DNA of 64,000 bases from Lepidodermella squamata (taxonomy: Eukaryota; Animalia; Gastrotricha). The position numbers and the translations under genes were made by a program. Of this stretch, positions 49,659 to 51,957 are shown piece after piece. The notes below the pieces were generated by a model. That model searched no databases. It was given only the letters and a program-made list of their open reading frames with translations, and was not told the origin of the DNA. Position 1 is the first letter of the stretch. Each line of letters begins with the position of its first letter. Location: positions 3,844,001-3,908,000 of the forward strand of contig JBLDXI010000009.1 of the NCBI GenBank assembly GCA_047495785.1, in the 5' to 3' direction.

Positions 49659-51957
49659 TTATTGATCAGTAATTTTTTCTGGTTCGGAATATTCTAAATG
49701 CTGATTTTCACTCGCCTCCATGTAAGCCAGTGTAATTTCGTTCAAAATTTTCGTTCCAGGTGATTTAGGCCGTGACCTTATCGATTCTCTCGAGCGTGAC
49801 CGTGATGAGCTATTCGTGACGCTATGCTGACTCTGTCGCCTAATTCCAGCCGAAAAATACTTCCGGCCACGTTTTAAACCTCGTTTCTGAGTATAGGACC
49901 AAAAAGCTGGTACCAAGTCGGGAAATCTTTCCGCAACGCTGTGAAAAATATCGTCCTTGGTAATTTTTTCTAAATCACAATGGTGGCCAAAAGTTTTAGC
50001 ATGATGGCGCTTCAACTCGACCAGGTTGTAGTCGTAAAAATTTCTGGCTGCAAACAGAACTTGGTCCAAATTAGTCGATCGTTTGTAGATTCCGTAGTAC
50101 ATGCGGTAAAATTCGTCGCAAATAATCTTCCGCAGGTGGCTGGGCAATTCCTCAGCCCAGGCTCGATTTTTGTTCCATTTCGCAGTTTTTTCTATAAATT
50201 CGCGAAATTTCGGCTCCGCAGCTAGGGGCTTCAAATGCTGCTCGAAATCTTCGCCATTCCACGTAACAGGATGGTCGAGTAATTCATCGATATTTCTTCG
50301 GTCGGCTGGTTTCTCGACGACCATAATTCGGATAAGGTGGCTCAAAAGCGGGAATTTTGGGTCTATGAAATCTTTCAGCTTCCGATCACGTATCGCCTCT
50401 GGGTGGTGTCGAAGATCGATATTTCGGTTGAACATCACGCGACCTCTTGAGCCGATGAAGTAAAACATGGCCCCAAGTGACCAAATATCGGCCTTTTTAG
50501 GCCCGTACCAATCAATGGGATTGGCAGTTTCCACATCTTCTGGAGCCTGCCAGCATTCGGCAACATTTTCCACTTTGTCGAGTTGAACTTTGCTCTCCCT
50601 ATGAAACAGGAGTGAAAAATAATATTTTTGAGACCGAAATAAAAAATGCAGCTTTCAGCTATAATTTAAAATCAAATTTTTGGATTGAAATTTCAAAAGT
50701 GAAAATTGAATTTTTTACGCACCCTTCGAGTTCGGAAATTACATCTTCTATTCGTTCCGCATCACCGCTTTCGGCCTGGCTCTCATTCTTCATCTGATAT
50801 CGCGATTTTATGAGCGCAAAATCCGCCAATTTCAGCCTCGGGCAGTTATCGCTGTCCGTGTTCTTTAAATCAACCAAAATATTACGCGGATTGACATCGC
50901 GCTGAAAAATGCCGTCACGGTGGATGAACGCGTAGCCGCGCAGCAGCTGCGTAATGGCCGATCGCACAAAGGCGTGGTCGATCCGCGATTGATTAGCCCG
51001 GATCCAATCGTACAAATTATCGTCACACAACTCCATAACCAGCGACATTTGCGTCTTCGATGGATCAGCTAAATCTTGCCCGATAACACAACCGTAGACC
51101 AGAACGATGTTAACATGACCCCGTAGCCGTTTCAGGGTCCCATCAACGTCCTGCTGGAAATCAATAGCGGGTTGTAGGATCGCGTTGGCATTGTTCCAAA
51201 ATTTAACCGCAACTTCTGTCCCATTATGATCGATATTGTACAGCTTTAATTTGTAAATCGCTGTCGATATCGTGATTTTGATGACGCTAGTCAATTTGTT
51301 GCCTCGGAATACGTTTTCGCCGAATGTGAAAACGACAGGATCCAACCCGGGTAGGGGTAGGACCCGTCTCGCGTCGCTGAAGTAATCAGCGAGGCGTGAC
51401 CGGCCCGGCCACCAGTCAAGCGGGACGAATATCTTAATTTTCGAGCTCAATTTCTTGCTCTGTTGAGCTAAAACTCGGCGATAGTAGCACGATAATTGGC
51501 CGTGGTCAGATTTTCGGCAGATCATGCAAACGTGGCTGAATTTACACGGGTCGTCGATGAATTTCCGACACGGTTCGCTGCCTGCGTTGAAAACTTGGCA
51601 CGTCGTCAGTTTTTCGGCGCGGTTTCGCTCTTCGAACGGGATTAGCCAGGCATCGAAGGGTGATCCTTTTCTCTTCCATGATTTTAGCCGTTTTTGATAC
51701 TTTGATTCGTCAATAAGCAGGATGATTTTGACATATTCGACTAATTCACGAAATCGATTTTCATTGCGCTGAATTTCCTTAAAAAAATATTCAAATGCTA
51801 GGAAAAAATAACTTAAAATTGAAATAAAACCTCGTATAAAGATTGAGCAATTGTAGTCCAGTCTGTTAAATCGTTGGAGACGTTCACGTTTAACCAGCCC
51901 CCAGTCGCCATTACAGTGCCCTGAAGTCTTAAAGAGCAAAAATTCAGAAGGTAACAA
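49659..51957 (-). CDS. CCCH-CCHC zinc finger + (pseudo)kinase + KEN ribonuclease-fold protein (RNase L/IRE1-like); 5' end unresolved
   Basis: ORFs 50659-51957 and 49659-50573 join via a phase-2 intron (50722-50599). Zinc fingers at 51487-51600. Kinase motifs VAVK, HVNIV, MELC, QRDVNPRNIL, LADFA, WQAPE, ADIWSLG. KEN-like tail LDHPVTW...W...LDQVLFAARN...RFPDLV. Confidence 0.8.

What the first reader, a model, noticed from the sequence alone, without database searches (positions are those of the whole stretch)
49659..51957. RNase L-like kinase-KEN protein with tandem CCCH/CCHC zinc fingers in place of the usual sensor domain
Seen: one spliced frame carrying C-x9-C-x7-C-x3-H directly followed by a C-x2-C-x4-H-x4-C knuckle, then a kinase and a KEN-like domain (HPVTW...RN...FPDLV). 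There is no ankyrin repeat and no TM segment between fingers and kinase. Known: animal kinase-KEN proteins are IRE1 (ER-luminal sensor plus TM) and RNase L (ankyrin 2-5A sensor, pseudokinase). Here HRD is QRD, the catalytic-loop Lys is Asn, DFG is DFA, there is no clear Gly loop, and the activation segment has a long acidic insert, which is more RNase L-like. The KEN R-N-x3-H motif reads RNFYDY, so the catalytic His is Tyr, with extra His pairs just downstream (RHH..GHH). Inference: a cytosolic RNA-sensing kinase-KEN module that binds RNA directly. It could be an antiviral or anti-transposon effector with altered chemistry, or a nuclease-dead regulator or decoy of related KEN enzymes.
Basis: partly seen in the sequence, partly recalled or inferred. 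Interest (0 to 1): 0.85.

Follow-up and report, generated by a model that had tools for sequence, protein, structure and literature searches.

The report
Zinc-finger kinase-KEN protein, degenerate sites
An expressed animal gene, kept by selection, joins RNA-type zinc fingers to a relative of the IRE1/RNase L kinase-plus-nuclease module whose usual catalytic residues are incomplete; it belongs to a barely described third branch of that family.

Summary
A three-exon minus-strand gene (51911..49659) encodes a soluble 691-aa protein. RNA-derived contigs skip exactly both predicted introns.

The protein has, in order:
- a CCCH finger abutting a CCHC-type knuckle
- a divergent protein kinase
- a C-terminal KEN domain
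- an Arg/Ser-rich tail

Pfam does not score the fingers or the KEN part. However, the KEN part scores 30 bits against a profile of its nearest relatives (best of 1000 shuffles 9.2). Those relatives hit Pfam Ribonuc_2-5A. A KEN-only profile of the clade finds only IRE1 and RNase L in the PDB. The predicted fold matches IRE1 through the whole KEN domain.

On a tree the protein sits in a strongly supported clade of finger-bearing kinase-KEN proteins, apart from IRE1-like and ankyrin-bearing ones. DFA is a trait of this clade. QRD, Lys-to-Asn in the catalytic loop, and the missing R-x4-6-H nuclease motif set this member apart from most of the clade.

The register of the nuclease helix is ambiguous (R564-N565...Y569, or A579-K580...H584). 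No register restores a full site.

Of 34 listed coding differences in two runs, 28 are synonymous. The most likely role is a non-canonical, probably non-cleaving RNA-binding regulator. The function itself is inferred.

The parts
51831..51911 (-). Exon A: start codon at 51911 and 27 codons.
   Evidence: Sequence. The intron joint 51776>51830 appears in X1 contigs and X1 depth is 0 upstream of 51922. An in-frame stop lies 18 codons upstream with no ATG between.
51778..51830 (-). Intron 1, 53 nt, GT..AG on the minus strand
   Evidence: An X1 contig skips 53 nt with CT..AC ends.
50723..51777 (-). Exon B: N-terminal helical/basic region, zinc fingers, and the kinase from the N-lobe to DFA and the acidic insert
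   Evidence: Open frame. Pfam Pkinase 2.6e-17.
51667..51693 (-). Basic cluster KRLKSWKRK (aa 56-64), NLS-like
   Evidence: Sequence scan. Its function is inferred.
51634..51648 (-). W-L-I-P-F motif (aa 71-75) that precedes the fingers in P0002, P0005 and P0023 as well
   Evidence: Alignments and motif scan.
51487..51600 (-). Zinc-finger module (aa 87-124): CCCH finger, then one residue later a C-x2-C-x4-H-x4-C knuckle
   Evidence: Sequence. The ligand columns are kept in P0002, P0005, P0023/P0159 and the L005 locus. There is no Pfam hit and the AF2 model failed.
50274..51291 (-). Protein kinase domain (aa ~190-487), interrupted by intron 2
   Evidence: Pfam. PDB phmmer hits. Motif table.
50881..50904 (-). 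Catalytic loop QRDVNPRN (aa 319-326): HRD His is Gln and the loop Lys is Asn; the catalytic Asp and the metal-binding Asn are kept
   Evidence: Sequence. Comparison with 15 relatives, of which 13 read H-R-D, 12 keep the loop Lys, and P0004, P0016 and ankyrin-type P0017 are also degenerate.
50815..50823 (-). DFA (aa 346-348) in place of DFG; a trait of the clade
   Evidence: Motif table: P0002, P0005, P0009, P0015, P0011 and P0007 also read DFA.
50599..50722 (-). Intron 2, 124 nt, inside the acidic activation-segment insert
   Evidence: An X1 contig skips 124 nt with CT..AC ends, and a loose end matches the start of exon C.
49659..50598 (-). Exon C: kinase C-lobe, KEN domain, RS-rich tail, stop codon
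   Evidence: Open frame. Clade HMM built without this protein scores 113 bits over the C-lobe plus KEN.
49875..50273 (-). KEN (HEPN-type) domain, aa 488-620, from HPVTW to past FPDLVP
   Evidence: Clade KEN HMM 30 bits against 9.2 for the best of 1000 shuffles. The clade KEN profile finds only IRE1 and RNase L in the PDB. The fold matches IRE1 through residue 964. The ESM Atlas nearest clusters are IRE1/KEN.
50028..50045 (-). RNFYDY (aa 564-569). Register 1: Arg and Asn kept, catalytic His position is Tyr.
   Evidence: L-INS-i alignment and two of the three HMMs. The spacing from Y550 to R564 is the same as in P0002.
49980..50009 (-). RHHAKTFGHH (aa 576-585). Register 2: His 584 (or 585) at the catalytic His position, with Arg-Asn replaced by Ala-Lys (or Lys-Thr).
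   Evidence: MAFFT default alignment and the 'all' HMM. Forced-register scores lie within 0.4-2 bits of register 1.
49662..49874 (-). C-terminal tail (aa 621-691), basic and Arg/Ser-rich, then acidic; no counterpart in the relatives aligned
   Evidence: Composition: 7 RS/SR dipeptides over aa 620-691. Alignment.
49617..49663 (-). Two AATAAA signals, one at the stop codon and one 41 nt downstream
   Evidence: Sequence scan. An X1 contig covers 49500-49919.

Best explanation
This is a functional gene for a soluble 691-aa member of a distinct, sparsely sampled clade of zinc-finger + kinase + KEN proteins. That clade is sister to the IRE1 and ankyrin-type kinase-KEN proteins.

**Shown**
- The three-exon transcript.
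- The domain order.
- Membership of the clade.
- The degenerate motifs.
- An excess of synonymous changes.

**Inferred working**
- The CCCH/CCHC module replaces the lumenal or ankyrin sensor and holds RNA directly.
- The kinase keeps the residues that grip nucleotide (K219, D321, N326, D346) but lacks the HRD His, the catalytic-loop Lys and a Gly loop. It therefore most likely acts as a nucleotide-binding pseudokinase scaffold, as in RNase L.
- The KEN/HEPN domain has no R-x4-6-H motif in any register. It therefore probably does not cleave RNA in the canonical way and serves as an RNA-binding or partner-binding surface.
- The NLS-like cluster and RS-rich tail suggest action on nuclear or newly made RNA.

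Overall it looks like a catalytically disabled or rewired RNA-binding regulator derived from active finger-kinase-KEN ancestors.
For: **Transcript and selection**
- Splice joints appear at both predicted introns, and no RNA depth lies upstream of exon A.
- Of 34 listed coding differences, 28 are synonymous and 6 are not. There is also an in-frame 3-nt indel in a finger loop.

**Domains**
- Pfam Pkinase hits the kinase.
- Only 30 proteins of 1.84 billion reach E<=0.001. Those whose match spans the C-terminal part carry Pfam Ribonuc_2-5A.
- The same finger module is present in P0002, P0005, P0023 and the P0011 locus.
- The clade KEN HMM built without this protein scores 30 bits, against 9.2 for the best shuffle.
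- The clade KEN profile finds only Ire1 (3.2e-07) and RNase L (1.1e-06) in the PDB.
- All of the top 50 Foldseek hits are IRE1. VIA-align Z is 10-13 over model 1-248 against human IRE1 646-964, versus Z<=8.4 and at most 114 aligned residues for other kinases.

**Placement and motifs**
- The tree clade has 100/99 support.
- In the motif table 13 of 15 relatives read H-R-D, 12 keep the loop Lys and 12 keep R/K-N-x3-H; this protein has none of them.
- No TM segment is found; the NLS-like cluster and RS tail are present.
Against: - No experiment or binding data exist.
- The fingers have no Pfam hit, and their model was unusable (pLDDT 43).
- The KEN stretch at issue is the lowest-confidence part of the fold model (pLDDT 46-53). 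The fold model also used an alignment that contained IRE1-like rows.
- A canonical-only KEN HMM scores this protein no better than shuffles (9.9 against 10.1).
- His 577, 578, 584 and 585, together with K580-x4-H585, could form a substitute active site.
- The catalytic Asp, the beta-3 Lys and the DFA Asp are present, so some kinase activity cannot be excluded.
- Only 40 of the 94 differences were listed, so the synonymous excess rests on a sample.
Confidence: 0.5

Rival explanations
1. It is an active endoribonuclease with a rewired KEN site. The fingers recruit RNA. Cleavage uses His 584/585 (K580-x4-H585 standing in for R-x4-H), or Tyr 569 together with nearby His pairs.
For: Register 2 puts a His in the invariant catalytic column. 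It scores as well as or slightly better than register 1 in forced tests. K-x4-H is present at 580-585. Four His residues cluster in 577-585. Purifying selection acts on the gene.
Against: No register keeps Arg, Asn and His together. In KEN domains both the motif's His and its Arg were found necessary for RNase activity (PMC3710099). In register 2 the hydrophobic Leu-Leu positions of the helix become Lys/His, or Lys/Arg with H585 (read directly from the sequence).
Confidence: 0.25
2. It is mainly a signalling protein kinase. The KEN-like tail is only a structural appendage and the fingers bind DNA or protein.
For: The beta-3 Lys, catalytic Asp, Asn326, DFA Asp and APE are all present. Most other clade members keep a full HRDxKxxN loop.
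Against: The HRD His and the catalytic-loop Lys are replaced, and no Gly-rich loop is present. The KEN part is conserved at the clade level and remains under constraint.
Confidence: 0.12
3. It is a decaying gene copy or an annotation artefact that joins unrelated ORFs.
For: Catalytic motifs in both enzyme domains are degenerate. No close orthologue is present in a library representing about 15 billion proteins.
Against: The 2076-nt frame is intact. Both introns are spliced precisely in RNA-derived contigs. The listed changes are 28 synonymous against 6 non-synonymous, and the only listed indel inside the coding exons is in frame. Fingers and kinase lie in one exon.
Confidence: 0.03

Closest known systems
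IRE1 (ER stress sensor kinase-endoribonuclease)
   Same: A kinase is followed directly by a KEN domain at an HPxxW junction. The predicted fold of the C-lobe plus KEN superposes on human IRE1 646-964 (Z up to 13.2). The clade KEN profile hits yeast Ire1 at 3.2e-07.
   Different: There is no signal peptide, luminal domain or TM segment, and zinc fingers stand in their place. The catalytic loop is QRDVNPRN and the R-N-x3-H motif is absent. The protein lies in a separate tree clade.
RNase L (2-5A-activated pseudokinase-KEN)
   Same: It is soluble, with an N-terminal sensing module, then a kinase-like domain with altered catalytic residues, then KEN. The clade profile hits RNase L at 1.1e-06 over its whole KEN domain.
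   Different: It has no ankyrin repeats and no evidence of a 2-5A pathway. The nuclease motif is not intact. Vertebrate RNase L itself could not be placed on the tree; an ankyrin-bearing protist relative (P0017) groups with IRE1-like proteins, not with this gene.
CCCH + kinase + KEN architecture noted in the HEPN survey (Anantharaman et al. 2013, PMC3710099, Table 1)
   Same: It has the same domain combination. The relatives found here (P0002, P0005, P0023, the P0011 locus) share the finger module, DFA and the CWxAPE signature.
   Different: That paper gives one phrase, with no description, phylogeny or function. The relatives keep HRD, the loop Lys and R-N-x3-H (K-N-x3-H in P0023; the KEN part of P0011 did not align); this animal member does not. 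It also adds an RS-rich tail.
Catalytically inactive HEPN domains (for example MtlR-type)
   Same: It is a HEPN-superfamily domain without R-x4-6-H. The survey proposes that such domains act as non-catalytic RNA binders (PMC3710099).
   Different: It is a different HEPN family in a different setting. The analogy was not tested.
Zinc-finger-guided RNA regulators such as Regnase-1/ZC3H12A or ZAP (from general knowledge)
   Same: CCCH fingers are joined to, or recruit, an RNA-degrading function. This is a functional analogy for the clade's active members.
   Different: The nuclease folds are unrelated (PIN, or recruited factors). No homology is claimed or tested.

Membership tests
Kinase-KEN proteins (IRE1/RNase L superfamily) | Protein kinase fold | tested here: met
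   Pfam Pkinase 2.6e-17 on exon B and 0.0018 on the C-lobe in exon C.
Kinase-KEN proteins (IRE1/RNase L superfamily) | Pfam Ribonuc_2-5A (PF06479) hit on the C-terminal domain | tested here: not met
   No hit at E<=10 on the isolated 142-aa part or at E<=1 on exon C. A KEN HMM built only from IRE1-like and other non-finger-clade relatives gives 9.9 bits, no better than shuffles.
Kinase-KEN proteins (IRE1/RNase L superfamily) | C-terminal domain homologous to KEN, shown by intermediate profiles and by fold | tested here: met
   Clade HMM 30 bits against 9.2 for the best shuffle. Clade members hit PF06479. The clade KEN profile finds only IRE1 and RNase L in the PDB. Foldseek and VIA-align match IRE1 through the KEN domain. 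ESM Atlas score 0.99.
Kinase-KEN proteins (IRE1/RNase L superfamily) | KEN/HEPN catalytic motif R-N-x3-H (R-x4-6-H) with the upstream Tyr | tested here: not met
   No R-x4-6-H occurs anywhere in aa 488-625. Register 1 gives R-N...Y and register 2 gives A-K...H.
IRE1 | Signal peptide, luminal sensor domain and a TM segment | tested here: not met
   Highest 19-aa hydropathy is 1.04. The ATG has an in-frame stop 18 codons upstream. No RNA depth lies upstream of 51922. Pfam gives no luminal-domain hit.
RNase L | N-terminal ankyrin repeats that bind 2-5A | tested here: not met
   No ankyrin family appears among the Pfam hits at E<=1. The N-terminus carries Cys/His fingers instead.
Finger-bearing kinase-KEN clade (unnamed) | W-[LVF]-x-P-[FY] motif followed by a C..C..C-x3-H-x-C-x2-C-x3-4-H..C module | tested here: met
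   Ligand columns align in P0002, P0005, P0023/P0159 and the L005 locus; P0030 shares the knuckle part.
Finger-bearing kinase-KEN clade (unnamed) | Groups with the clade on a kinase+KEN tree and shares DFA and CWxAPE | tested here: met
   Clade support 100/99, separate from the IRE1/ankyrin clade at 90/85. Motif table and alignment.
zf-CCCH (PF00642) | C-x-C-x-C-x3-H ligand pattern recognised by the family model | tested here: inconclusive
   The pattern C-x9-C-x7-C-x3-H, with aromatic residues after Cys 2 and Cys 3, is present. There is no Pfam hit at E<=10. The ESM Atlas gives only a 0.85 lead. The AF2 model is unusable.
zf-CCHC zinc knuckle (PF00098) | C-x2-C-x4-H-x4-C recognised by the family model | tested here: inconclusive
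   The exact spacing is present at 111-124, but there is no Pfam hit. In relatives the last Cys lies about 10 to 20 or more residues after the His, so this may be a knuckle peculiar to the clade.
Catalytically competent protein kinases | Gly-rich loop, VAIK Lys, HRD, catalytic-loop Lys, DFG Asp | tested here: not met
   K219, D321, N326 and D346 are present. The HRD His is Gln, the loop Lys is Asn, and no GxGxxG is present.

The most novel reading that the evidence does not exclude
Finger-bearing kinase-KEN proteins are a third functional class beside IRE1 and RNase L, in which RNA bound by the CCCH/CCHC module itself drives assembly of the kinase-KEN core. This animal member, with both catalytic centres altered and an added RS tail, would then be a selected non-cleaving derivative. 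It could act as a nuclear RNA-surveillance or splicing regulator, or as a decoy for active paralogues.
Probability: 0.3. Interest if true: 0.75.

Novelty: new variant of a known kind. Interest (0 to 1): 0.6.

Why it matters
Kinase-KEN enzymes are known through two paradigms. In IRE1 the sensor reads unfolded protein; in RNase L it reads 2-5A. A separate clade whose sensor position is filled by RNA-type zinc fingers suggests a third input, RNA itself. Apart from one phrase in a 2013 survey, I found no description of it.

This gene gives an expressed and constrained animal example. Both of its catalytic centres are altered, so it is a natural test of what the kinase-KEN scaffold does without canonical chemistry. 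If active relatives prove to be RNA-triggered RNases, the family would bear on how RNase L-type defence and IRE1-type RNA processing evolved.

Tried and rejected
- **Word-index search with exon B:** no hit at E<=0.001.
- **Word-index search with P0002:** it returned mostly generic kinases and a few plant IRE1s, so it did not enlarge the clade.
- **Pfam on the isolated finger, KEN and N-terminal pieces:** nothing useful.
- **phmmer of exon C against the PDB:** only C-lobe matches.
- **AF2 of the finger module with a 7-row alignment:** pLDDT 43, so I did not search with it.
- **Tandem duplication of the catalytic helix (aa 555-569 against 570-584):** DNA identity is 17/45, and about 9% of other in-frame windows reach that, so it is not supported.
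- **Settling the catalytic register by forced-register HMM scoring:** the scores differ by only 0.4-2 bits, so it is unresolved.
- **Giant-virus origin of the relatives:** a scan of viral contigs with P0023 found no relative.
- **Paralogue inside the window:** none by tblastn.
- **Organisms of the relatives:** all are unnamed metagenome or Logan contigs, plus one unnamed NCBI assembly.
- **Literature:** searches for a described finger-kinase-KEN protein found only the table entry in PMC3710099.
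Full report
**Gene model**

The finding lies on the minus strand. Two long open frames (50659..51957 and 49659..50573) join across a GT..AG intron at 50722..50599. 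A short upstream exon (51911..51831, ATG at 51911) joins exon B across a 53-nt intron. The spliced CDS is 2076 nt and encodes 691 aa with no internal stop.

Two public runs hold near-identical DNA. Contigs of run X1 skip exactly 124 nt (50597>50722) and 53 nt (51776>51830), with CT..AC ends on the + strand. They leave the intron uncovered and give no depth upstream of 51922. X2, a second organism, covers everything and is DNA-like. So fingers, kinase and C-terminal domain are in one spliced mRNA, and the 'missing first exon' is found.

An in-frame stop lies 18 codons upstream of the ATG with no ATG between. No 19-aa window exceeds hydropathy 1.04, so there is no signal peptide or TM segment.

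**Selection**

Of the 34 listed differences that fall in coding sequence, 28 are synonymous and 6 are not. The only listed indel inside the coding exons removes 3 nt in total at aa 92-94. That is the loop between the first two finger cysteines, which also varies in length among relatives. The table showed 40 of 94 differences, so this is a sample. It still argues clearly against a decaying locus.

**Domains by direct search**

- Pfam finds Pkinase (2.6e-17 on exon B; 0.0018 on the C-lobe in exon C). It finds no ankyrin, no Ribonuc_2-5A, no zf-CCCH and no zf-CCHC, even on isolated pieces at E<=10.
- The N-terminal half of the kinase is closest to generic kinases in the PDB: MAPK, CDK5, PKR and ULK.
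- Exon C alone gives only C-lobe matches.

**Relatives**

An exhaustive phmmer of aa 380-629 against 1.84 billion cluster representatives gave only 30 hits at E<=0.001, the best at 8.8e-10. No close orthologue is therefore in that collection.

Hits whose match runs through the C-terminal part carry Pfam Ribonuc_2-5A. These are P0002, P0003, P0005, P0008, P0012 (weakly), P0017 and P0022; P0016, whose match ends soon after the HPxxW junction, carries it too. Domain contexts differ:
- P0017 also has ankyrin repeats.
- P0022 looks IRE1-like.
- P0005 has a RanBP-type zinc ribbon.

P0002, P0005 and P0023 show the same N-terminal module as this protein: a W-[LVF]-x-P-[FY] motif, a CCCH finger, and one or two residues later C-x2-C-x3-4-H-G...C. 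P0011 and P0030 are ORF calls that start inside the knuckle. Translating upstream of P0011 in its contig recovers part of the CCCH finger, its last two Cys and the His. The ligand columns align across these proteins at 25-30% overall identity. All relatives come from unnamed metagenome, Logan or NCBI contigs.

**Is the C-terminal domain KEN?**

Five lines of evidence bear on this.
1. An HMM of C-lobe plus KEN built from 19 relatives, without this protein, aligns it end to end at 113 bits.
2. KEN-only HMMs give different answers by source. The finger-clade model scores 30.0 bits, against 9.2 for the best of 1000 shuffles. A model built only from the IRE1-like and other non-finger-clade relatives scores 9.9, against 10.1. 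The link to canonical KEN is therefore transitive.
3. A KEN-only profile of the clade, with this protein as one of nine rows, finds six distinct PDB sequences at E<=1. All are IRE1 or RNase L, aligned over the whole KEN domain: yeast Ire1 3.2e-07 and RNase L 1.1e-06.
4. An AF2 model of aa 380-629 (mean pLDDT 66) has only IRE1 among its top 50 Foldseek hits. With VIA-align the IRE1 entries score Z 10-13.2, with about 205 residues aligned over model 1-248 against human IRE1 646-964. Other kinases score at most 8.4, with at most 114 aligned residues. The input alignment contained IRE1-like rows, so this test is not fully independent.
5. The ESM Atlas feature search on the single sequence puts IRE1/Ribonuc_2-5A clusters first, at 0.99.

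I conclude that the domain is a divergent KEN domain.

**Placement**

A maximum-likelihood tree of kinase plus KEN puts this protein in a clade with 100/99 support. The clade holds the finger-bearing and DFA-type proteins. It is separate from a 90/85 clade holding the IRE1-like proteins, the ankyrin-type protein and the other relatives outside the finger clade that carry a Pfam KEN domain. The protein sits on a long branch (1.66) and its position inside the clade is unresolved. Vertebrate RNase L was not available for the tree.

**Catalytic residues**

- *Kinase.* K219, D321, N326, D346 and APE are present. The HRD His is Gln and the catalytic-loop Lys is Asn. There is no GxGxxG. DFA is shared by most of the clade, so it is ancestral there. 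Thirteen of the 15 aligned relatives read H-R-D and 12 keep the loop Lys.
- *Other degenerate relatives.* P0004 and P0016 also have a degenerate catalytic loop. The ankyrin-type P0017 shares the loop Lys-to-Asn change.
- *Activation segment.* It is about 50 residues long, against 32-38 in P0002 and P0005. It is acidic and is split by intron 2.
- *KEN.* Twelve of the 15 relatives keep R/K-N-x3-H and two more keep the His. This protein has no R-x4-6-H anywhere in aa 488-625.

**Two registers for the catalytic helix**

Two registers compete for the catalytic helix.
It aligns Y550...R564-N565...Y569. It is chosen by L-INS-i and by two of the three HMMs. It keeps the Tyr-to-Arg spacing of P0002 and the hydrophobic face of the helix.
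- *Register 2* aligns A579-K580...H584, or K580-T581...H585. It is chosen by default MAFFT and by the combined HMM. It fits the distance to the FPDLVP motif seen in P0002 and P0012.

Forcing either register changes the scores by only 0.4-2 bits. The AF2 model is at its weakest here, with pLDDT 46-53. The two 15-aa segments are not significantly alike in DNA (17/45). The firm statement is that no register gives Arg, Asn and His together.

**Other features**

An NLS-like cluster, KRLKSWKRK, lies at aa 56-64. A basic, RS-rich tail begins at about aa 620 and is followed by an acidic end. The relatives aligned show no counterpart to this tail.

**Mechanism**

What is shown:
- an expressed, constrained, soluble finger-kinase-KEN protein
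- altered catalytic centres in both enzyme domains

What is inferred:
- The fingers bind RNA. CCCH fingers with aromatic residues after Cys 2 and Cys 3 are typical RNA binders (general knowledge).
- The kinase acts as a nucleotide-binding pseudokinase scaffold, as in RNase L (general knowledge of the RNase L structures).
- The KEN domain acts as a non-canonical, probably non-cleaving surface for RNA or partners. This is in line with the proposal that HEPN domains lacking R-x4-6-H bind RNA without cutting it (PMC3710099).

A rewired active nuclease that uses the His cluster at 577-585 remains a serious rival.

**Comparison with what is known**

[quoted passage not shown] Other literature searches found nothing.

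The protein therefore fails the membership tests for IRE1 (no luminal/TM part) and for RNase L (no ankyrin repeats). It passes the tests for the broader kinase-KEN superfamily, except the catalytic motif. It is a member of an unnamed finger-bearing clade.

**Host**

The neighbouring genes are animal-type: a UAA/SLC35B-like transporter, an R3H gene (the same ORF holds Cys/His-rich repeats that look NFX1-like, from my reading), Neuralized and PAP2. The best named relative of the PAP2 neighbour is from a shrimp, at 34% identity. The host is thus a poorly sampled invertebrate, possibly an ecdysozoan. I did not pursue its identity further.

Noticed in passing
window 48668-49581 (+) against 49659 (-): A UAA/SLC35B-like transporter gene on the + strand ends 78 nt from the stop codon of the kinase-KEN gene. 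The two genes converge. Their AATAAA signals interleave, so the 3' UTRs probably overlap. One X1 contig spans 49500-49919.
   Followed up: partly
window 50599-50722: In run X2 (a second organism, a few per cent different in the exons) about 100 nt inside intron 2 are replaced by 164 other letters, while the flanking exons stay conserved. The intron turns over faster than the coding sequence.
   Followed up: no
window 52720-53847 (-): The next gene upstream on the same strand is a large exon with an R3H domain (Pfam). Its Cys/His-rich repeats look NFX1-type by eye. It ends about 800 nt before the kinase-KEN start.
   Followed up: partly
P0005 (loci L002, L003): One clade relative carries an extra RanBP2-type zinc ribbon upstream of the CCCH/CCHC module. 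The clade therefore varies in its N-terminal zinc modules.
   Followed up: no
L005:165-380 (+), upstream of P0011: The database ORFs P0011 and P0030 start inside the zinc knuckle. The upstream DNA of P0011 encodes the C-terminal part of the CCCH finger, so these database proteins are truncated gene calls.
   Followed up: partly
L004 (contig of P0159): The 36-kb metagenome contig carrying a finger-kinase-KEN relative is densely packed with small ORFs that have no Pfam match, plus a DEAD helicase, a second kinase and a Macro-domain gene. Its organism is unknown, and a scan of viral contigs found no relative.
   Followed up: partly
P0004/P0039 and P0016: Other relatives also have degenerate catalytic motifs (HGN for HRD in both; QFH for DFG and loss of the KEN motif in P0004). 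Loss of catalysis has therefore happened more than once among these kinase-KEN proteins.
   Followed up: no
window 13117-14715 (+), 35307-36290 (+), 62628-63686 (-): Other recognisable genes in the window are an R3H+SUZ protein, a PAP2 lipid phosphatase and a Neuralized-domain protein. All are animal-type and all are compact.
   Followed up: partly
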